Made by a program: the position numbers and the translations under genes. Of a stretch of DNA of 64,000 bases, positions 8,161 to 18,062 are shown in pieces. The DNA is taken from IMG/VR virus record IMGVR_UViG_3300023179_005186, positions 124,001 through 188,000 of that record; one strand, given 5' to 3'. The notes beneath the pieces were generated by a model. The model was not told where the DNA came from and did not search any database. It saw nothing but the letters and a program-made list of their open reading frames with translations. The first letter of the stretch is position 1. Each line of letters starts with the position of its first letter.

Positions 8161-9174
8161 ATGTTAGAATATATTGCAATATTTTATAACTACTTTAAGT
8201 TATTTATTAGTTTAAGTTTGTTTACTTATATCTTTAAATTTTGTTTTGATACTTGTAATGAAAAAATAACTATAAAAAATAAACATGGAAAAAAAAAGCA
8301 AACTATAAAATCGAGAATAGGCTTAGCTATAACATATTTATTTTTTTGTATTATGTTATATTTTAGTTTAACTCCATATGTATTTTTTACAATTTTTAGT
8401 TTAATTGGCATTGGTACACTTTATGCATTAGATAAATTTGATAAACCAACTGTTAATCAATTATGTGTTTATGATAAAAATAAGTTATTAAGAACAGTAT
8501 GGAAGATTTTGTATACTGTAATTAATATAGTTTTCTATTTATATTCACCAGTTCATAGTATTATGAGTTCTAATTTTACTAATTTATTTGCAAATGCTAA
8601 AAATAAAACAACAAATACAGTTAATAAACATTTATTTTCTGGAATGGGAGAAGGATTAGGTGGAACATTAGGTGGAACATTAGATGGATTAGGTGATATT
8701 ACAACAATGGTTAGTGCTAAAGGAAAAGATCTAGGACAAAATCTTAAAAAAGTAATTCATGAATTAACTTCTGATGATAATAATGATAATAATGATAATA
8801 CACTTTCTTCAATGGGTGATTATATAAATAAAACTGATAATGATAAATCTAAGCAAATTATTAGTCAAAATCAAAAAATGATTATTGAAGAAGAAACGTC
8901 AACTGAAAATATAAAAGAAGTAGAAGTACAGTTAACACAAAATGAAATAGAAGATTTTAATAAATTAAAAAAAATATTAAATTCTGATGTTGTTGAACAA
9001 GAAGAAGAAAATGAAGATGATCAAGACTGTAAAATTGAAAATAATGATATTGATCAAAAAGAAGAGTCAGAAAAACTTTTAAAACTGTTTAAACAAATGA
9101 ATGATATATTCAGTACTACGGAAGAGGAATCTACCATAATTGATAATGTAAATAATACTGAAAAAACAGACTAA
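8161..9174 (+). CDS. Hypothetical membrane protein with acidic C-terminus
   Basis: 337-aa ORF with N-terminal hydrophobic helices and a GGTL tandem repeat. Confidence 0.7.
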   Translation: MLEYIAIFYNYFKLFISLSLFTYIFKFCFDTCNEKITIKNKHGKKKQTIKSRIGLAITYLFFCIMLYFSLTPYVFFTIFSLIGIGTLYALDKFDKPTVNQLCVYDKNKLLRTVWKILYTVINIVFYLYSPVHSIMSSNFTNLFANAKNKTTNTVNKHLFSGMGEGLGGTLGGTLDGLGDITTMVSAKGKDLGQNLKKVIHELTSDDNNDNNDNTLSSMGDYINKTDNDKSKQIISQNQKMIIEEETSTENIKEVEVQLTQNEIEDFNKLKKILNSDVVEQEEENEDDQDCKIENNDIDQKEESEKLLKLFKQMNDIFSTTEEESTIIDNVNNTEKTD

Positions 9175-9298
9175 AACTTTATTAAATTATTAGTTAAAAC
9201 TAATAAAATTTTTTTTTTTTCTAATAGTAATAATTACTAATAATTATTAAAAAAATTGTATTAATTTAAATATAGATTATTATTTATATATATAATCC

Positions 9299-12200
9299 AT
9301 GCAGACTATTGAGCCAAAAGATTCAGAACTAACAAATAATAAAATTTTCGAGCTTTTGGATGCAAGATTTGGCCGCAGATATATTTTATATGAACATCTT
9401 CATAATTCTTACAACGAATTAATTAATCAGATTATTTATTATTTACAAACAAATGATAATATTTTTCAAGAAAACAGAATTGGAGATTTAATATACAGAT
9501 ATCGGTTCAAATATGAAAATCTATTTGTTCGTCCTCCCTTAAATGATAACGGAGATTCACTTATGTATCCTATGGATGCACGTGATAGGAATTTAACTTA
9601 TTCAATTAAAATTTTAGCAAAGATTACGCAACTACAAGAAATTTATGATTTAAATAAAAGTGAAATTATTAGTGTTAAAGTTATAGGAACTCCTGTCGAA
9701 AGAGAAACAGCTGTTATTTTACCTTGTATGGTCCGTTCCAAGTATTGTTCACTTGAAATAAATCGTGACTATAACAAGAAGGATTGTGAATATGATCCTG
9801 GAGGATATTTTATAGTTGGTGGTTCTGAAAAAATAGTTTTATCAATAGAAAGGATGGTAGAAAATAAACCACTTGTGTTTATAAAAAAAGATGCTGGTTT
9901 TATTAATTATTCAGTTAAAGTTAATTCAAGATCTTCAAATCCAAATATTATGATGCAACCAATTGAAATTAGAATAGAAAAAAATTATGATATTAAAATT
10001 AAGGTTCCAATTTTACAGGAAGTATCAGTATTTGTATTAATGAGAGCATTAGGTTTAGAAACTGATAAAGAAATTATCAAATATATTTTATACAATGATA
10101 ATGACATTGATATGTTAAATTTACTTAAAATATCTATAGATCTATCCAAGACTGAAAATAAGAAACTTATATTAACAAAAGAAGATGCTTATTTTAGTTT
10201 AACTAATAAATTACGAGTTGTTAAAAAATTTACTGATAAAGATAAAAAGCTCTTATATGATGAAAAAAAAGAGCATTTGCAACAATTATTAAGTACAGCA
10301 TTTATGCCACATATGAATAATAATCATCATGCTGATATTTTTAAAGCAAAAGCTTATTTTTTAGGTTTAATGGTAAATCGTTTATTAAATGCTTATTTAG
10401 GAAGAACTGAACCTGATGATCGTGATTCATTTGTTAATAAGCGAATCGATATGCCAGGTGAATTAATTTTTGATCTATTTAAGCAATATTATAAAAAAAT
10501 GTTAAATGATTGTAACAAGTTTTTTAATAGAAGATCTGCTTCAAATCATGATAATCCTCTAAATATTATTAATCAAATTAAGCCAACAACTATTGAACAA
10601 AATATTAAATCTGCAATGATGACGGGAAATTGGGGGAAAAAAAAAGGTGTTGCGCAAATGTATCCAAGACTAACTTTTTTACAATCATTATCTTTTCTAC
10701 GTAGAGTTGATCAATCAAGTTCAGAGGCATCTGCTAGTAAATTAACTGGTCCTAGACATTATCATCCATCTCAAGTTGGTTTTTTATGTCTAACAGGTGA
10801 TACAGAAGTGTTGATGTCAGATGGTTCGATAAAGTTAATAAAAGATATTAAAAATGGTGAATCAGTTATTTCGGTTGATAATAAAACTATGACAGAGGTA
10901 TCAACTCCAATTAAAAATTGGTTTAAACAAGATTGTGAAAAATTATTAAAGATAACAACTATTTCTGGTAGAGTTATTAAATGTACTCCAGATCATAAAT
11001 TATTAACTAAAGTTGGTGATAAATATGATTATGTAGAAGTTCAAAATTTAAAACCAAATCAAGATAGTTTAATTACTCGTCATACAGTAAAATATATTCC
11101 TCTAGATAAAACAACTGAAGTTATTATTACTGATGTATTAGAATTATACAAGATTCCATTACTTGAATTAGGATATTTAGACAAGTCTATATCACAAGAA
11201 AAATTAGAAATATTAGCAAGATTAATTGGTTTAAATATTGCAAATGGTCATATAGAAATCAAACCTGATGAAAAATACTATAATTGTGAATTTTTAGTAG
11301 CTGAAGAAAAAGATGCATTAGACTTATTAGATGATATTATGAAATTAGGTTTTGGAACTTCATCAATTAAAAGTGTAAAAAATAATCATATTAAATATAA
11401 AAATGGTAAACATACTATTTATAACACATGGAGTATTATTAAAAATGGTGTATTTGCTTATTTACTAAATTATTTGGGAGCTTTTGATAGAAAAAATCAA
11501 TTAGAATGTAAAATTCCTGATTGGATTATGAATGCAAATAAAAGAATTCAAAGAGAGTTTATAAGTGGTTTTATTGCTGGTAATGGATCTAGATTATTTA
11601 TGAATTTAAATAAAGGTATTTTTAAAATTAATTGTAGTAGATTGTGTCAAGTTTCTTCAAAAGTAAATGTAGTTGACACAATTAAATATTTAGAACAATT
11701 TATTATAATATTTAAACAGTTTAATATTGATTGTTATGTTAGTAAATTAAAAGAAACAGATGATTATGATAAAACACGTTGTGAAATTATCTTTAAACAA
11801 TCTTATGAAAATTTAAATAATTATGCTGATATAATAAACTTTAGATATTGTAATGAAAAAAGAAAAAAATCAGCTTTAACAATTGAATATATAAAATACA
11901 AAAATTATTATAGTGCAAATATTCCTAAAGATAAAAAACTTGGTACTAATCCATGTTTAAGTTATAAAGATTTTATTAAAGAAACGAATATCAATGATGA
12001 AAACTTTTTAATTAAAATAAAGTCGATTGAAGAAATCCCTACAGAACCAGTTTATGATTTTGAGACAATATATGATACACATAGTTTTGTAGCTGGTTCA
12101 CTTTACACTAGTAATTGCCCGGTAGAGTCTCCAGAGCATTCTAACATTGGTTTAGTAAAACATTTAAGTTTAGTTGGATCAATTACAGTAGGATCTCAAG

Positions 12201-15200
12201 ATCAGTCAATATTAATATATAATATGTTAAATGAAAATAAAAACTTTATACATTTAGATAATCATTCTGCGACATACTTGGCTACAATAACAAAAGTATT
12301 TTTAAATGGTGAATGGATTGGTATGACAGATAATCCAGATGATTTATATCAAGAATTACGAACTTTAAAACAGAATGGTATTATTTTAAGAACAAATGGT
12401 ATAACTCTCGATTATACAAGAGGTGAAATAAGAATTTATACAGAGTCTGGGCGTTTATACAGACCGGTATTTACTGTTAAAAATAATAAATTATTAATGA
12501 CGGATAAGATAATTGATGATATTTGCAAGGATTCAAAATTAAAAGGATTAAATAAATTTGATGCATTAATTACTAAATATCCAGAAACAATTGATTATTT
12601 AGATATGGAAGAACAGTTTTATGCATTAGTTGCAGATTATAAAGATAAAGTTTTAGAAATGAAATCTAGAGAATTAAATGTATTTGATGATACAAACGAA
12701 CCTATTATTAATCGTTATGATAAATCAATGATTATGAAATATACTCATTGTGAATTTCATCCAACTGTTATCCTTGGTATTATTGCTGGAAATATTCCTT
12801 TTGCAAATCATAATCAAGGACCAAGAAATATTTTTCAGTATGCACAAGGTAGACAAGCGATGGGTATTTATTCAAGTAATTATCGTGATAGATTGGATAT
12901 TTCATATATTCTTTATCATACACAAAAACCGTTAGTAAATACTAAGATAGCAAAATATGTCCACACAGATATTTTACCTTGTGGTGAAAATGCTGTAGTA
13001 ATGATCGGATGTTATACAGGATATAATCAGGATGATTCTATTATATTTAATCAAACATCTATAGATCGTGGATTATTTAGATCTACATCACTTAAAAAGT
13101 GGAGTTCAAAGATTGAGAAAAATCAATCTACATCACAAGATGATATATTTATGAAACCAGATATTTCAAAACTTACAGGAACAAGACATGCTGTTTATGA
13201 TAAATTAAATGACAAGGGATATGTTCCTGAAGAAACTGTTGTTGAAAATGGAGATGTAATTATTGGAAAAGTAACTCCAATACAACCAGCTCCAGGATCT
13301 AACAAATGTTTTAAAGATTCTTCTGAAATCTATAAATCTCAAGAAACTGCTATAATCGATAAAGTTTTTACGGGAATACATGATTCTGAAGGTTATGAAA
13401 TGATTAAAATTAGAACAAGATCCGAAAGAATTCCAAAGACAGGAGATAAATTTTGTTGTTTTAGCCCAGATCATGACATTTTAACAGAACGTGGTTGGAT
13501 TGGAATAAGTGAAGTAACAAATATGGATAAAGTTGCTTGTTTAAATTATGGAATATTAGAATATAATAATCCAATTCAAGTAATGAATTATGATTATGAA
13601 GGTAAAATGTACTTATTAGATGCATATCAAGTAAATTTAAAAGTAACTCCAAATCACAGAATGTATGTTAAAAAAATAAATTCTGAAAATTATAATATAG
13701 AATTAGCAGAAAATATATTTAATCAGACAAGAATATATAAAAAAAATGCAAATAATTATTTAAATAATGATAAACATCAATTATTAAGTTACTATAATGA
13801 GACTTTAAAAATTAATGTTCACTATCCAACTGGATTTATTCTTAAAAATAATGAAGATATTAATGATATTAAAATATTAGATATTAATGCATGGTTATCA
13901 TTTTTTGGAATATGGATGGCGGAAGGATTTGCTGCTAAAACAGCAAGATCTTTACAAGTAAGTTTTGCCGCTCATAAAAAACGAGTTAAAGATGAGTTAA
14001 CACGTGTTTGTAATATTCTTGGTTATGAAATTAATAAAAAAAAAGATAAATCGTACTCACTAGAAGAAGATATTTGGATAATATCTGATAAAAAGTTGAG
14101 GAAGTATATGGAACCCTTGAGTGTTGGTGCTGTGAATAAATCATTACCAGATTGGGTATGGTATTTAACAAAAGAACAATGTAATTTATTAATTGATGGT
14201 ATGATGTTAGGTGATGGTTATAAAATTAAAGGAACAACTACACGAAGATATGATACATCATCATTAAAATTAGCAAATGATTTTCAAAAACTATGTTTAC
14301 ATGCTGGAATTTGTTGTAATTTAAAACTTAAATATAAAGCTGGTAATGAAACTATTATTAAAACTCCTGGTAGAGAAGGAGAAAAAATAAAATCAACAAG
14401 AGATGCGTATAGATTAACTATTATTTCAAAATCAGAACAAACAGTAAATATTAATAAATTTAATGATTCTTATATTGATTATAAAGGTAAAGTTTATTGT
14501 TGTAGTGTTCCAGGTGAAGGAATAATTTATGTTAGAAGAAACGGGATTCCAATTTGGTGTGGAAACTCGAGACATGGGCGAGTAACTTTTACCCATAACA
14601 GGAGGCTGTGGAATCGTGAGGTTCCAATTCAAGTATTGAATTAACAATACACAGTGTTACCTTCTAGTCGGCAATATCGTCGGGCTAATATTGAATTTTT
14701 CAATATCAAGTGATGATATTGTGGTACGTCAGAGACATCTGATACCTAGGATAGTATAATCATACTATTTGAACAGGCAAGAATTGTGAAAACGGTCAAA
14801 ATCTCAAGAAAACCTTTGAGACAAGACCGTCGGTGTAGTAAAGTCGCGAGGCTTTATGATATCGCGATCGACTGGGTCACAGTTCGGTGAAGTTATAAAT
14901 TAACTTTGCTTAATGTACAGTCAGCCCCCGTGGTGATACGGTGCTACAATGATCAGGATATATTGAAAAGATATTCTAGGGAAGTTGTAGGTTAAACAAG
15001 ATATATATTTACTTGTTTAATGATTAGCGAAAAAGGTACTATCGGTCTAACTTTACATCAATCAGACATGCCCTTTACTAAAGAGGGTATTAGTCCAGAT
15101 TTAATTATTAATCCAAATGCGATCCCGAGTGAAATTCGCTCATGTGGTCTAGCAATAGATTGCAAGTCTCTTATTTATAAAATAAGAGGCAACACTTTCA

Positions 15201-16845
15201 AATTGCGGGAAAGTCGTCAATAAGTATACAAATAAAATTGTCTTAAAAATAAAAATATATTATTAAATAATAAAATGTTAAGAGTGTGCAAAATATGTAA
15301 TATTGAAAAAGATATTAATGAGTTTAGATGCAAACTTGTTAAAACTTAAAAGTAAATGATCCTGAAAAATATAAAGAAATAAAAACTAAACAATCTAATA
15401 GAGACAAAAACTACTATGATAATAATAAAGATAGAGTTAATCAAAGAAATGTTTTAACTGGACAAATATTTCACCATTATTAGCATCTGAAAACAGAAAA
15501 AAAATAATAAAATATATGATACACATATTTTAAGACAAGAATTAAGAGTATACTTATTTAAACAGATTATGGATACCGCATCTATATCTAGCGATATAGA
15601 GTAGCAGGTGGTATAATGGCCATCGGATGGTAAAAACTCCATGATACACGGTGACAATCCGCAACCAAGATTTCCAATAATGGGAATAAGGCTCAGAGAC
15701 TAGACGGAAGTGGGCTTGTTTTATTTTAATAAGACAGGCTTAAGGTATAGTCCACCCCCTAATGAAAGTTAGGGGATTAAGTGAGAATGACGATCGCACA
15801 ATTAATTGAATGTTTAATTGGAAAAGTTGCTGCAATTAAAGGTTTAGAAACAGACGGCACATCTTTTAACCAAATAGATATAGAAACAATAAAAAATGAA
15901 TTAGAAAAATTAGGTTATGAAAAAAATTGTAATGAATACTGTTATAATGGTATGACAGGTCAAAGACTTAAAATACCAATGTTTATTGGTCCTACTTATT
16001 ATCAAAGATTAAAACATCTAACCGCTGATAAAATACATTGTTTAACAGGTGATCATGATGTTTTAACAGAAAATGGATGGATAAATATTCAAAATATAAC
16101 TAAAGAAATAAAAGTTTTAACTTTAAAGTCAGATATAGAATTATATGATTATCCAAATCATGTTTATAAATATGAAGATTTAAATGAAAAAATTCTGTAT
16201 CATGTTAAAAATGAAGATATTGATACAATTATGACTGAAGAACATAGAGTTTATATTAATAATAATTTATTAATTAAAATAAATCAACTTGATCATAAAA
16301 ATAATACAATATATAAATGGTATAATAGAAGTAGTTCATTTAATGTTAATCATACTACTGATATCACTATTTATCAATCTAAAGATAATGTTTATTGTTT
16401 AAGTGTTCCAAGTGAAATATTTTATGTTAGAAGAAATGGTAAAGAGTTTTGGACTGGTAATTCTAGAGCTCGAGGACCAAATACAATGCTTACACATCAA
16501 CCACCAGAAGGTAGATCAAAAGATGGTGGATTACGTTGCGGTGAAATGGAGCGTGATTCAATTATAGCACATGGAATGAGTAAATTCTTAAAAGAAAGAT
16601 TTTTAGATGTTTCTGATGCTTACTCATGTTATGTATGTGATATTTGTGGTTTATTCGCACAGCGTGATAAAAAGAAAGATAACAAAACAGTACCACAAAA
16701 TACAGATATTTACAAATGCATTAATTGTAAGAATAAAACAAAAATTTCAAAGGTAATTATTCCTTATGCATTTAAATTACTAATTCAAGAATTAATGTCA
16801 ATGAACATTGCACCAAGAATTAGAACTAAACAATATAGTTTATAA
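9299..16845 (+). CDS. RPB2: RNA polymerase second-largest subunit; exons 9299-14579, 15030-15130 and 15784-16845; three inteins
   Basis: Motifs [56 protein letters not shown] and [11 protein letters not shown]. Joined exons give 6444 nt (2147 aa); removing 954 aa of inteins leaves 1193 aa, a normal RPB2 size. Confidence 0.95.
10787..12115 (+). mobile_element. Intein 1 in RPB2 (443 aa) with a degenerate LAGLIDADG endonuclease
   Basis: GFL|CLTGDTEV...CTPDH...VYDFET...YTSN|CPVESPE. Both LAGLIDADG-like helices have Asn at the acidic position (NIANG, IAGNG). Confidence 0.93.
13457..14566 (+). mobile_element. Intein 2 in RPB2 (370 aa) with a LAGLIDADG endonuclease
   Basis: GDKFC|CFSPDHD...VTPNH...FFGIWMAEG...[10 protein letters not shown]...WCGN|SRHG. 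Confidence 0.93.
14580..15029 (+). mobile_element. Group I intron 1 in RPB2 (450 nt, ORF-less)
   Basis: Removal restores H-G-Q-K-G-T (ggg c|aa aaa ggt) and the intron ends in G. P1 atgggc/acccat; P7-like gactg...cagtc in atcgactggg / taatgtacagtcag; acggtc/gaccgt stem. Confidence 0.88.
15131..15783 (+). mobile_element. Group I intron 2 in RPB2 (653 nt)
   Basis: Removal restores IPS|RMT. The exon ends in U paired with G15138 (gagt/gctc) and the intron ends in G. Classic P (aaattgcgggaa), Q (aatccgcaacc), R (tcagagacta) and S (aaggtatagtc) elements. Confidence 0.93.
15275..15503 (+). pseudogene. Decayed intron-encoded HNH/Zn-finger homing endonuclease
   Basis: [17 protein letters not shown]...stop (15275-15349) and, in another frame, [18 protein letters not shown] (15450-15503); the central part is missing. 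Confidence 0.7.
16039..16461 (+). mobile_element. Mini-intein 3 in RPB2 (141 aa, no endonuclease)
   Basis: DKIH|[14 protein letters not shown]...MTEEH...VYCLSVP...[11 protein letters not shown]|SRARGP. Confidence 0.93.
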
Positions 16846-16881
16846 GCTTAAATATTAAAGTATAATTTAAAAAATTTTTAT

Positions 16882-16912
16882 ATAAATAATTTATTTAATA
16901 TAAATTATTTAT
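16882..16912 (+). terminator. AT-rich 3' hairpin after RPB2
   Basis: ataaataatttat...ataaattatttat-like inverted repeat; consistent with the mimivirus hairpin polyadenylation rule. Confidence 0.55.
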
Positions 16913-16957
16913 TTAATCCACCCATTAAATAAATTTTATATAACATAATTCTATATT

Positions 16958-17272
16958 ATGACCGGTTGTTCAATTACACCTAAAACTTTTCAAATCGCTG
17001 TTAATACTGTTGCTGATGGTTTATTAGTAGATAAACTTAAAACATTTGTATTAGATATTTTAGTTAAAATTCAAGATCTAATTATATGTGTTACTGGTAT
17101 TGATATTCTTCTACTTTTACAATATTTAACTATTCTAGCTGTTATTGTATGGTTATACAACTTAATTAAAAATGTTGTTGAAACATACCTATGTTGGTTT
17201 AAGTGCAAGCCATCACATAAAAGTTCTACACATTCACATTCAGATAATGATAGTGATTGTGATTGTCATTAA
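16958..17272 (+). CDS. Small membrane protein with His/Cys/Asp-rich tail
   Basis: 104 aa; TM segment followed by CKPSHKSSTHSHSDNDSDCDCH. Confidence 0.7.
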   Translation: MTGCSITPKTFQIAVNTVADGLLVDKLKTFVLDILVKIQDLIICVTGIDILLLLQYLTILAVIVWLYNLIKNVVETYLCWFKCKPSHKSSTHSHSDNDSDCDCH

Positions 17273-17345
17273 TTAATTATTTATTTATATTAGTTCATAT
17301 TCAACTAATATTTTTTTATTTTTTTATTTTTTTATTTTAGATATA

Positions 17346-18062
17346 ATGAAAAAAATATTATCAAAAGAAATATTTTTTAATATAAATAATATTTCACATG
17401 AATATAAAAAAATTGTTAATAACTTTGATAATGTTATTCAATTAAAAGAATGTAAAATTTGTCTTAGTGAAAATTCAGAAAATCAACTAATAAGTCCTTG
17501 TTTATGTAAAGGATCTTTACAATATGTACATATAAATTGTTTAGAATATTATCATTATAAATACAAGAAAGATATTTCTAAGTGTGAAATATGTGGATAT
17601 GAATATCAACAAAAATCTAAATATAATTATCAACTAATTTACAAATTAACATATATTTATTATACAGTAATTTTTATAAATATTTTTACAACAATATTTT
17701 TATTTGACAGTGATATATTTTCTTTTATAATTATTGGATTATTTTTATATTTATTTAAGATTATATTTGAATTTAATAATTTTTATAAATACAATATAGA
17801 TGTATACTTACCAGAAAAATATAATCTAACGGAATCTGATTATAGAATTTTACTTAATATTTATAAAAATCATTTAGTTATTAGTTATATTTTAGTTATA
17901 ATATATAAAGTTTTTATACAAAATAATATAATTTATACATTATTAAATAAAAATATTTATAAAATTTATTATCTTTTAATTAGCTTATTTTTTTTGATTT
18001 ATATAAATAAATTTATAATCTCTAAATCAAAATATTTTATAATTATAGATAGAAATAATTAA
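17346..18062 (+). CDS. RING-variant (MARCH-like) membrane E3 ubiquitin ligase
   Basis: CKIC...SPCLCKGSLQYVHINCL...CEIC (C4HC3) followed by TM helices. Confidence 0.88.
   Translation: MKKILSKEIFFNINNISHEYKKIVNNFDNVIQLKECKICLSENSENQLISPCLCKGSLQYVHINCLEYYHYKYKKDISKCEICGYEYQQKSKYNYQLIYKLTYIYYTVIFINIFTTIFLFDSDIFSFIIIGLFLYLFKIIFEFNNFYKYNIDVYLPEKYNLTESDYRILLNIYKNHLVISYILVIIYKVFIQNNIIYTLLNKNIYKIYYLLISLFFLIYINKFIISKSKYFIIIDRNN

What the first reader, a model, noticed from the sequence alone, without database searches (positions are those of the whole stretch)
9299..16845. RPB2 carries five self-splicing parasites
Seen: three inteins and two group I introns, four of them within about 3 kb of the catalytic-core coding region. 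Intein 2 ends only 13 nt before intron 1, and the middle exon is 101 nt. Established: inteins and introns occur in giant-virus polymerases at highly conserved motifs. Inference: this load is unusually dense, and the intein and adjacent intron may co-convert or block each other's homing site.
Basis: partly seen in the sequence, partly recalled or inferred. Interest (0 to 1): 0.6.

Follow-up and report, generated by a model that had tools for sequence, protein, structure and literature searches.

The report
Giant-virus RPB2 with five self-splicing inserts

Summary
RPB2 (9299-16845, +) has three exons, two introns and three in-frame inteins. Removing them gives a 1193-aa protein colinear with solved RPB2 structures and with uninterrupted viral homologues.

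- **Intron 2** passes Rfam's group I model. It carries the wreck of an HNH endonuclease gene that is intact in a 93%-identical relative.
- **Intron 1** is missed by Rfam. It has the group I P3-P8 pseudoknot core with covariation and a terminal G. Its guide sequence co-varies with the exon at four insertion sites. Its 5' splice site uses a C·A pair in place of U·G.
- **Intein 2** folds as a Hint domain plus a LAGLIDADG endonuclease with both catalytic acids kept.
- **Intein 1** has both catalytic Asp replaced by Asn.
- **Intein 3** is a 141-aa mini-intein paralogous to intein 2.

Among about 130 related loci, the count of five is high. However, close relatives carry six to eight or more elements, with exons down to about 15 nt. 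Intein 2 and intron 1 occur in all four presence/absence combinations. They therefore neither depend on nor exclude each other. No spliced RNA was seen; the available RNA-library contigs are unspliced. This is a new member of a known kind (Bodo saltans virus, klosneuviruses, CroV).

The parts
9299..16845 (+). RPB2 (second-largest RNA polymerase subunit) gene: 3 exons, 2 introns, 3 inteins. Predicted mature product 1193 aa.
   Evidence: ORF map and translation. Colinear with solved RPB2 chains. It is the only RPB2 copy in the 315.7-kb contig.
10787..12115 (+). Intein 1, 443 aa, inserted at GFL|CPVESPEH (fork region). Hint domain plus a LAGLIDADG domain in which both catalytic Asp are Asn (motifs at 11213-11251 and 11558-11590). 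The endonuclease is probably dead.
   Evidence: TIGR01445 at 48.3 bits against a cutoff of 24.5; intein-containing RtcB model E = 6.8e-34. RecA/DnaB mini-intein hits. Alignment with 8 allelic inteins shows D kept in L005, L008, L010 and L012, but N in the window and L002; L022 has a mini version.
13457..14566 (+). Intein 2, 370 aa, inserted at GDKFC|SRHG (hybrid-binding region). Hint domain plus a two-motif LAGLIDADG homing endonuclease with the catalytic E and D kept (motifs at 13901-13930 and 14189-14221). It is the only element here with an apparently intact endonuclease.
   Evidence: AlphaFold2 model with pLDDT 89.2 and pTM 0.88. Foldseek top hits are the TliVMA, PhoVMA, PI-TkoII, PI-SceI and PI-PfuI inteins, with I-DmoI for the nuclease domain. 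The acidic residues are conserved in all 12 aligned homologues. TIGR01445 gives only 20.2 bits, below the cutoff.
14567..14579 (+). 13-nt extein/exon remnant (S R H G plus the first base of Gln) between intein 2 and intron 1. Its last six bases form the exon strand of P1 of intron 1.
14580..15029 (+). Intron 1, 450 nt, ORF-less, a divergent group I intron.
- Guide sequence: 14591-14596.
- P3: 14781-89 / 14877-85.
- P4: 14792-97 / 14825-30.
- P6: 14839-45 / 14850-56, with a GNRA loop.
- P7: 14870-74 / 14918-22.
- P8: 14886-93 / 14903-10.
- The last base is G.
- The 5' splice site has C(-1) facing A in place of U·G.
   Evidence: No Rfam hit. Family alignment and RNAalifold: 43 of 95 pairs have compensatory change. 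Helix counts. P1/guide covariation in 9 orthologues and at 4 insertion sites. A covariance model of its core hits the Rfam-positive intron 2 core at E = 7.8e-4.
15030..15130 (+). Exon 2, 101 nt ([34 protein letters not shown]).
15131..15783 (+). Intron 2, 653 nt, a group I intron.
- P1: GAGU with GCUC at 15138, with a U·G wobble.
- P3: 15193-99 / 15706-12.
- P4: 15203-09 / 15658-64.
- P7: about 15697 / 15748.
- The last base is G.
   Evidence: Rfam RF00028 at 58.1 bits (gathering score 50), E = 7.3e-14. Helix coordinates. Orthologues at the same site in L116, L109, L121 and L097.
15275..15604 (+). Remains of an HNH homing-endonuclease gene inside intron 2. Pieces for residues 1-24, 46-81, 195-224 and 212-247 survive. 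Two deletions (63 nt and 339 nt, the second removing the HNH core) and a frameshift break it.
   Evidence: The intact 247-aa ORF is in the orthologous intron of L116. tblastn and blastn of L116 against the window show 95-97% nt identity in shared parts.
16039..16461 (+). Intein 3, a 141-aa mini-intein with no endonuclease domain, inserted at DKIH|SRARGP. It is paralogous to intein 2.
   Evidence: TIGR01445 at 26.1 bits against a cutoff of 24.5. BLASTP to intein 2 gives E = 3e-11 (N-terminal part) and 8e-9 (C-terminal part), but E = 0.54 to intein 1. Full-length (about 350 aa) allelic inteins occur in L005, L012 and L018. Tree.

Best explanation
This is a functional RPB2 gene of an uncultured freshwater mimivirid-like giant virus. 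Five selfish self-splicing elements have invaded it, each at an invariant catalytic motif.

**How the product is made.** The primary transcript must lose two group I introns by guanosine-initiated self-splicing. The 2147-aa precursor must then lose three inteins by protein splicing. This yields a 1193-aa subunit.

**State of each element in the homing cycle.**
- Intein 2 still has an apparently intact LAGLIDADG endonuclease and may be mobile.
- Intein 1 keeps the endonuclease fold, but both catalytic Asp are Asn.
- Intein 3 has lost the endonuclease domain and is a paralogue of intein 2 at a look-alike target (DKF.|SRHG versus DKIH|SRARG).
- Intron 2 carries a recently deleted HNH endonuclease gene that is intact in a close relative.
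- Intron 1 has no ORF. It belongs to a divergent group I lineage that has colonised at least four RPB2 sites. At this site it uses a C·A pair at the 5' splice site.

**Shown:** the anatomy, the family assignments, endonuclease integrity or decay at sequence and fold level, and presence/absence polymorphism among relatives.

**Inferred:** that all five elements splice in vivo, that intein 2's nuclease is active, and that the elements without an endonuclease persist by vertical descent or by trans-homing or co-conversion.
For: - **Anatomy and frame closure:**
- **RPB2 colinearity across all junctions:**
- **Uninterrupted homologues:**
- **Single RPB2 copy in the contig:**
- **Inteins:**
- **Intron 2:** Rfam 58.1 bits; HNH pseudogene against the intact L116 ORF.
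- **Intron 1:** family alignment, RNAalifold and helix covariation.
  - Guide/exon covariation: G·C to A·U at -2, U·A to C·G at -5, and C·A to U·G at -1, across 9 orthologues and at other sites.
  - A terminal G in all copies.
  - Its covariance model cross-hits Rfam-positive group I cores.
- **Polymorphism among relatives at 80-93% exon identity:** every element is present or absent somewhere.
- **Not an assembly artefact:** RNA-library contigs reproduce the genomic arrangement at 100% identity.
- **Precedent:** Bodo saltans virus polr2a/polr2b, with RT-PCR-confirmed splicing (PMC5871332).
Against: - No spliced RNA was observed. Contigs from four RNA libraries run unspliced across all four splice sites. 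One X4 contig ends exactly at 14579, which is only a hint.
- Rfam does not recognise intron 1.
- A C at -1 is very unusual for group I introns.
- Intein 2's N-terminal splicing model is below the curated cutoff (20.2 against 24.5 bits).
- All three inteins lack the usual penultimate His (SN, GN, GN).
- Endonuclease activity is inferred only from conserved residues and a predicted fold.
Confidence: 0.82

Rival explanations
1. Composite cassette. Intein 2's LAGLIDADG nuclease is the single engine. Only 13 nt and 101 nt of exon separate intein 2, intron 1 and intron 2. Double-strand-break repair from this allele would therefore co-convert the whole 13457-15783 block. The two introns, which lack a working endonuclease, would hitch-hike, as in trans-homing of the defunct T4 nrdB intron by MobE.
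For: - Intein 2 is the only element with intact catalytic residues.
- The spacings are 13 nt and 101 nt.
- There is a positive, uncorrected association of intein and intron at the two adjacent sites (odds ratio 4.9, p = 0.05).
- Precedent for trans-homing: PMC2790892.
Against: - All four occupancy states exist.
- The closest intron 1 (L114) is in an intein-free allele with an identical 26-nt exon stretch.
- The closest intein 2 relatives (L115, L002) lack the intron.
- The intron is paired with two different intein types, at registers one codon apart, in the window versus L022 and L009.
- Intron 2's orthologues (L116, L097, L109) sit in alleles with neither intein 2 nor intron 1.
Confidence: 0.2
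2. The elements are kept because they serve the virus. Their endonucleases would cut the unoccupied RPB2 of competing related viruses during co-infection, while the occupied allele is immune. This is the interference-competition model proposed for Bodo saltans virus.
For: - The hypothesis is stated for BsV polr2a/polr2b (PMC5871332).
- Here, closely related viruses from similar freshwater samples carry empty sites (L116, L097, L089, L004).
- At least one nuclease looks intact in the window (intein 2). An intact HNH exists in the L116 intron.
Against: - Four of the five elements in the window have no working nuclease.
- Target sites in empty relatives are only about 72-83% identical over 60 nt.
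- There is no experimental evidence. Plain selfish persistence at sites where imprecise loss is lethal explains the same data.
Confidence: 0.15
3. The gene is a decaying pseudogene, and some or all inserts no longer splice.
For: - No spliced RNA was seen.
- The contig is only about 28% of a genome, so a second copy cannot be excluded.
- L043 shows that some relatives have two RPB2 copies.
Against: - All exons are open, and all catalytic motifs are intact after in-silico splicing.
- All intein nucleophiles (Cys1, terminal Asn, +1 Cys/Ser, TxxH block B) and all intron core helices and the terminal G are conserved.
- Exons are 80-93% identical to relatives, while inteins are only 60-69% identical. 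This is the pattern expected of a constrained host gene.
Confidence: 0.04

Closest known systems
Bodo saltans virus polr2a/polr2b and klosneuvirus/catovirus RNA polymerase genes (Deeg et al. 2018, PMC5871332)
   Same: Mimiviridae-like giant viruses in which the two largest RNA polymerase subunit genes are broken by several group I introns plus inteins. Some introns carry HNH or GIY-YIG endonucleases, and others are ORF-less 'offspring' copies in the same gene. Splicing was shown by RT-PCR in BsV.
   Different: - This is a different, uncultured freshwater virus.
- BsV's RNA polymerase inteins were described as lacking active endonucleases. Intein 2 here keeps both catalytic acids and a confident LAGLIDADG fold.
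- Site-by-site comparison with BsV was not possible, because its sequence was not among the fetched loci.
CroV (Cafeteria roenbergensis virus) RPB2 intein
   Same: L027 is a 617,453-bp IMG/VR record that I take to be CroV, from its length and my own knowledge. It has a mini-intein of about 150 aa at the same GDKF site, ending WIGN|S. It falls in the same intein family.
   Different: CroV has this single element. The window has five, and its site-2 intein is full length and sits one codon further downstream.
RNA polymerase second-subunit inteins of eukaryotes and NCLDVs (Goodwin et al. 2006, PMC1635734): RPB2-a/b/c, RPC2-a, RPA2-a, viral RPO-a
   Same: - Non-allelic inteins at several highly conserved sites in the fork, hybrid-binding and anchor regions near the active site.
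- Viral RPO-a inteins resemble RPB2-b inteins and end in TGN. Intein 3 here ends WTGN and intein 2 ends WCGN.
   Different: Which of their six sites equal the three here could not be checked, because the figure with the flanking residues is not held. In that paper no single gene carried more than one intein.
Trans-homing of the defunct T4 nrdB intron/I-TevIII by the neighbouring MobE endonuclease (Wilson & Edgell 2009, PMC2790892)
   Same: An element without a working endonuclease is carried along by gene conversion started by a neighbouring endonuclease. This is the mechanistic model for how intron 1, intron 2 and intein 3 could still move.
   Different: Here the neighbour is an intein-borne LAGLIDADG enzyme, nothing has been tested, and natural variation shows the neighbours assort independently.
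Endonuclease-bearing inteins PI-SceI, PI-PfuI, PI-TkoII, TliVMA
   Same: Predicted two-domain architecture of intein 2: Hint splicing domain plus a double-motif LAGLIDADG nuclease. Foldseek E = 5e-15 to 2e-9, probability 1.00.
   Different: Sequence identity is only 7-14%. The host gene and insertion site are different. Activity is untested.

Membership tests
Group I intron (intron 2) | Match to the curated covariance model (Rfam RF00028) above the gathering score | tested here: met
   58.1 bits against 50, E = 7.3e-14 at 15533-15774. The 8.5-kb scan missed it because of filters.
Group I intron (intron 2) | U·G wobble at the 5' splice site within P1, and G as the last intron base | tested here: met
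   Exon GAGU pairs with GCUC at 15138. The intron ends in G at 15783.
Group I intron (intron 1) | Match to Rfam RF00028 | tested here: not met
   No hit at E <= 10, even on 296-nt and 1261-nt stretches. A homologue was also negative. This is a weakness of one model, not a defining feature of the class.
Group I intron (intron 1) | Core order P3-P4-P5-P4'-P6-P7-P3'-P8-P7' (P3/P7 pseudoknot), supported by covariation | tested here: met
   - P3: 41/44 cells paired, 3/9 pairs with double changes.
- P6: 33/35 paired, 5/7 with double changes.
- P8: 39/40 paired, 3/8 with double changes.
- P4 and P7: fully paired but invariant.
- RNAalifold independently finds P3, P6 and P8.
- The core model cross-hits the Rfam-positive intron 2 core at E = 7.8e-4, and other group I cores in relatives.
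Group I intron (intron 1) | Internal guide sequence pairing with the 5' exon (P1), and a terminal G | tested here: met
   The guide co-varies with the exon in 9 orthologues and at 4 different insertion sites. All copies end in G.
Group I intron (intron 1) | U·G wobble at the cleavage site | tested here: not met
   C(-1) faces A in the window and in 7 orthologues. L009 and L022b have U·G. From my own recollection, not checked here: a C·A pair can replace U·G in the Tetrahymena ribozyme (Doudna, Cormack & Szostak 1989). I therefore read this as a variant, not an exclusion.
Group I intron (both) | Self-splicing with exogenous guanosine | not testable with these tools
   RNA-library contigs show only the unspliced form.
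Intein (Hint domain) - inteins 1, 2, 3 | In-frame insert starting with Cys/Ser, ending in Asn/Gln, followed by Cys/Ser/Thr, with block B TxxH. Removal restores the host motif. | tested here: met
   - Intein 1: C...SN|C, block B TPDH.
- Intein 2: C...GN|S, block B TPNH.
- Intein 3: C...GN|S, block B TEEH.
- Host motifs are restored.
Intein (Hint domain) - inteins 1, 2, 3 | Curated N-terminal splicing-region model TIGR01445 above its cutoff of 24.5 bits | tested here: inconclusive
   Intein 1 scores 48.3 (met), intein 3 scores 26.1 (met) and intein 2 scores 20.2 (below, E = 9e-4). Intein 2 is rescued by the fold match to solved inteins.
Intein | Protein splicing activity | not testable with these tools
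   No proteomic or expression data.
LAGLIDADG homing endonuclease (intein 2) | Two LAGLIDADG helices, each ending in a catalytic Asp/Glu, in an alpha-beta-beta-alpha-beta-beta-alpha fold | tested here: met
   The motifs end in ..AEG and ..GDG, and are conserved in 12 of 12 homologues. The model has pLDDT 89. Foldseek hits I-DmoI and endonuclease-bearing inteins.
LAGLIDADG homing endonuclease (intein 1) | Catalytic Asp/Glu at the end of each motif | tested here: not met
   Both are Asn in the window and in L002. Asp is kept in L005, L008, L010 and L012.
HNH homing endonuclease (ORF in intron 2) | Continuous ORF containing the HNH core | tested here: not met
   The window lacks 63 + 339 nt, including the core, and has a frameshift. 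The intact 247-aa ORF is in L116, matching phrog_1035 (endonuclease VII) at E = 1.2e-9 and phrog_7091 (HNH endonuclease) at E = 5.9e-4.

The most novel reading that the evidence does not exclude
Intron 1 represents a group I lineage that the Rfam model does not detect.
- It spreads between RPB2 sites by re-tuning its guide sequence.
- At two sites it has replaced the near-universal U·G cleavage-site wobble by an isosteric C·A pair.
- This freshwater mimivirid clade is a natural population in which all stages of the homing cycle coexist for at least nine RPB2 sites.
- Elements without an endonuclease are kept mobile in trans, either by intein 2's LAGLIDADG enzyme or by the HNH enzyme of L116-type introns.
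Probability: 0.3. Interest if true: 0.55.

Novelty: new member of a known kind. Interest (0 to 1): 0.35.

Why it matters
On its own the locus confirms what is known from Bodo saltans virus, klosneuviruses, CroV and mimiviruses. The catalytic core of giant-virus RNA polymerase is a hotspot for inteins and group I introns.

The comparison set adds three things:
- **Polymorphism.** About 130 related loci show each element present, decayed or absent at 80-93% exon identity. This gives a ready-made natural experiment on homing cycles, ectopic transposition (intein 2 to intein 3; intron 1 at four sites) and linkage between adjacent elements.
- **Annotation.** Gene callers will report this gene as a 1781-aa ORF plus fragments, and Rfam will miss intron 1.
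- **The C·A splice-site pair.** It is a small but testable oddity for ribozyme specialists.

Tried and rejected
- **Rfam on intron 1.** Three scans of the window (8.5 kb, 1.26 kb, 296 nt) and one of a homologue gave no group I hit for intron 1. The 8.5-kb scan also missed intron 2, which scores 58 bits on a shorter stretch. A blank from a long scan therefore means little.
- **RNA evidence.** One run holds 90% of the region's words. All laid contigs are unspliced. The two reported joints come from other organisms (short sides, mismatches). Only contigs were available, not raw reads. This neither supports nor refutes splicing.
- **Source of intron 2's AT-rich insert.** tblastx against the first 50 loci gave only low-complexity noise. 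PHROGs on the short ORF pieces gave nothing. The answer came only from the metagenome relatives.
- **Other copies of intron 1.** BLAST of intron 1 against its own contig found only the copy itself.
- **Early-promoter motif AAAATTGA.** It is not enriched in the window: 33 found against 35 expected.
- **Literature on natural C·A splice sites.** The search found nothing. The precedent is cited from memory only.
- **Strict dependence or exclusion between intein 2 and intron 1.** Rejected from the 2x2 table.
- **RNAalifold's pairing of CGGUC with GACUG**. I prefer P4 (CGGUC/GACCG) plus P7 (GACUG/CAGUC), because this gives the canonical pseudoknot. All these bases are invariant, so covariation cannot decide.

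Full report
**Source and observation.**
The window is bases 124001-188000 of a 315.7-kb IMG/VR giant-virus contig (also Ga0214923_10000006) from a freshwater metagenome. CheckV completeness is about 28%.

In the flagged region a 1781-aa ORF (9299-14644) is followed by short frames and a 354-aa ORF ending at 16845.

| Element | Coordinates | Size |
|---|---|---|
| Exon 1 | 9299-14579 | |
| Intein 1 | 10787-12115 | 443 aa |
| Intein 2 | 13457-14566 | 370 aa |
| Extein remnant | 14567-14579 | 13 nt |
| Intron 1 | 14580-15029 | 450 nt |
| Exon 2 | 15030-15130 | 101 nt |
| Intron 2 | 15131-15783 | 653 nt |
| Exon 3 | 15784-16845 | |
| Intein 3 | 16039-16461 | 141 aa |

Removing all five elements closes the frame and yields 1193 aa.
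- Solved RPB2 chains align colinearly with no residue lost or gained at any junction.
- Several viral homologues align to residues 1-1193 as one uninterrupted piece.
- Only one RPB2 is present in the contig.

**The inteins.**
All three start with Cys, end with Asn, are followed by Cys or Ser, and have a TxxH block B.

*Intein 1.*
- It passes the curated N-terminal splicing model and matches an intein-containing RtcB model over 375 residues.
- Aligned with eight allelic inteins, its two LAGLIDADG motifs end in Asn. L005, L008, L010 and L012 have the catalytic Asp at these positions. L002 shares the Asn pair, and L022 has a mini version.
- The nuclease is therefore probably dead here.

*Intein 2.*
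- It is below the curated sequence cutoff (20.2 against 24.5 bits).
- An AlphaFold2 model built on 12 homologues is confident (pLDDT 89, pTM 0.88).
- Foldseek matches endonuclease-bearing inteins (TliVMA, PI-SceI, PI-PfuI, PI-TkoII), with I-DmoI for the nuclease domain.
- Its catalytic Glu and Asp are conserved in all 12 homologues.

*Intein 3.*
- It is a mini-intein. Allelic full-length versions of about 350 aa occur in L005, L012 and L018.
- It is significantly similar to intein 2 in both splicing halves, but not to intein 1.
- In a tree, site-3 inteins nest beside the window-type site-2 inteins.
- The two target sites resemble each other (DKF.|SRHG and DKIH|SRARG). This fits an old ectopic jump within the gene.

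*Site-2 registers.* Site-2 inteins occur at two registers one codon apart.

**Intron 2.**
- On a 1.26-kb stretch Rfam's group I model scores 58.1 bits against a gathering score of 50.
- The true P3 and P4 5' strands lie near the 5' end (15193-15209), and their partners lie at 15658-15712. The core is therefore split by a long insert.
- The insert is the wreck of an HNH endonuclease gene. L116 has exons 93% identical, and its orthologous intron holds an intact 247-aa ORF with endonuclease VII/HNH family matches.
- The window copy is 95-97% identical in nucleotides to L116. It lacks 63 nt and 339 nt, including the HNH core, and has a frameshift.
- L097 has a 334-nt ORF-less version at the same site.

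**Intron 1.**
Rfam does not see it. Homologues exist in many relatives. The evidence that it is a group I intron is as follows:
- The family alignment folds into a conserved structure, with 43 of 95 pairs showing compensatory change.
- The core has the group I order P3-P4-P5-P4'-P6-P7-P3'-P8-P7'. Covariation supports P3, P6 (GNRA-capped) and P8. P4 and P7 are invariant.
- Its P7 strands (GACUG/CAGUC) and J8/7 resemble those of the Rfam consensus.
- A covariance model built only from intron 1-type cores hits the Rfam-positive core of intron 2 (E = 7.8e-4) and other group I cores inside relatives' RPB2 genes.
- A guide sequence about 12 nt into the intron pairs with the last six exon bases, and it co-varies with them. 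The changes are G·C to A·U at -2 (L126, L022) and U·A to C·G at -5 (L063, L009). The guides differ entirely at three other insertion sites: QYA|Q, D|K and RHG|Q.
- All copies end in G.
- At the window's site the exon base at -1 is C and always faces A. L009's intron sits one base upstream and has the canonical U·G.
- I read this as a C·A substitute for the wobble pair. The experimental precedent is from my memory and was not found in the library.

**RNA evidence.**
One freshwater metatranscriptome run holds 90% of the region.
- Its contigs, and those of three other runs, are 100% identical to the genomic arrangement and unspliced across all four splice sites.
- One contig of another study ends exactly at 14579.
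- Contigs drop minor forms, and RNA libraries may carry viral DNA. Splicing is therefore neither shown nor refuted.
- The contigs do show the arrangement is not an assembly artefact of the source contig.

**Is the load unusual?**
I mapped the in-silico mature protein onto 50 IMG/VR loci and 79 metagenome loci. At least nine sites are used, in mature-protein numbering:

| Site (mature numbering) | Flanking motif |
|---|---|
| 496/497 | GFL\|C |
| about 740 | QYA\|QGRQ |
| about 798 | not read out |
| 943/944 | GDKF. |
| 947/948 | SRHG\|QKG |
| about 977-982 | NP.AIPS\|RM |
| 1066/1067 | DKIH\|S |
| about 1080, 1085 | not read out |
| about 1094 | GE\|MERD |

- Many loci have none to two elements.
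- L022 has at least eight, including four introns in about 31 codons.
- L129 has at least six.
- L020 has at least five, with exons of about 15 nt.
- The window's five is high but typical of its immediate lineage.

**Do intein 2 and intron 1 interact?**
- Among 61 classifiable, dereplicated loci the counts are 9 both, 24 intein only, 2 intron only (L114, L121) and 26 neither.
- Fisher p = 0.05, or 0.12 if L120 is added, uncorrected for relatedness.
- L114 carries the closest intron 1 in an intein-free allele, with an identical 26-nt exon stretch.
- The closest intein 2 relatives have no intron.
- The intron is paired with different intein types in different viruses.
- There is therefore no dependence and no exclusion.
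- On established knowledge of double-strand-break repair, homing from this particular allele should carry along anything 13 nt away. Trans-homing by a neighbour's nuclease has precedent in T4 (PMC2790892). This remains inference.

**Comparison with the known.**
- The same picture was described for Bodo saltans virus and noted for klosneuvirus and catovirus: several group I introns plus inteins in both large RNA polymerase subunit genes, some with HNH or GIY-YIG genes and some ORF-less copies (PMC5871332).
- CroV (L027) has a mini-intein at the GDKF site.
- Multiple non-allelic inteins at conserved RNA polymerase sites were catalogued in 2006 (PMC1635734).
- In the same contig, RPB1 also carries a probable group I intron with a GIY-YIG ORF and an intein-like segment.

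**Verdict.**
- This is a new member of a known kind. Modest extras are an intact-looking intein nuclease, a freshly broken HNH gene, a group I lineage that Rfam does not detect and that uses a C·A splice-site pair, and rich presence/absence polymorphism in relatives.

Noticed in passing
Same contig, outside the window: G000:C1:41816-45033 (L054): The RPB1 gene of the same virus also looks invaded.
- A sub-threshold Rfam group I hit (37.6 bits) at contig positions 43316-43533.
- An upstream 303-aa ORF with an I-TevI-like GIY-YIG N-terminal domain.
- An intein-like segment (residues 339-477) at the end of the RPB1 ORF piece.
   Followed up: partly
L116:1245-2312 (ORF 1390-2133); L121:2093-3187; L097:4838-5171: Orthologues of intron 2 at the same IPS|RM site exist in three states: with an intact 244-247-aa HNH ORF (L116, L121), with a broken one (the window), and ORF-less at 334 nt (L097). 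This is a complete homing-cycle series among viruses with 85-93% identical exons.
   Followed up: yes
L022:9880-11640 and L020:9440-10720: The 31 codons between DKIH and MERD are split by three or four group I introns into micro-exons of roughly 15-48 nt (for example one coding only PEGRS). This is far smaller than the window's 101-nt exon.
   Followed up: partly
window 13457 and 14566; L009, L020, L022, L014, L017, L027, L042: Homologous inteins at the GDKF site occupy two registers one codon apart: GDKF|C...N|(C/S)SRHG and GDKF(A/C/S)|C...(N/Q)|SRHG. Several end in Gln instead of Asn (L002, L003, L011, L015, L018).
   Followed up: partly
L013:9333-10680 and L033:8740-9260: L013 has a group I-like intron immediately upstream of its site-2 intein, inside the GDKF codons. 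L033 has an intein at IINP|C, four codons upstream of the window's intron 2 site. These are more cases of tightly adjacent elements.
   Followed up: no
window 14258-14579 (RNA run X4, record 15): A 322-nt contig from an RNA library of a different study is 100% identical and ends exactly at the predicted 5' splice site of intron 1. This is compatible with a graph branch between spliced or intron-free and intron-containing forms, but it is not proof.
   Followed up: no
L043:6540-14192: This relative carries two tandem RPB2-like genes (35% and about 27-30% identity to the window's protein), both uninterrupted.
   Followed up: no
window 9000-17500 against 14560-15820 (Rfam scans): The same 58-bit group I match was lost when 8.5 kb was scanned and was found when 1.26 kb was scanned. 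Long-stretch Rfam blanks on this AT-rich genome are unreliable.
   Followed up: yes
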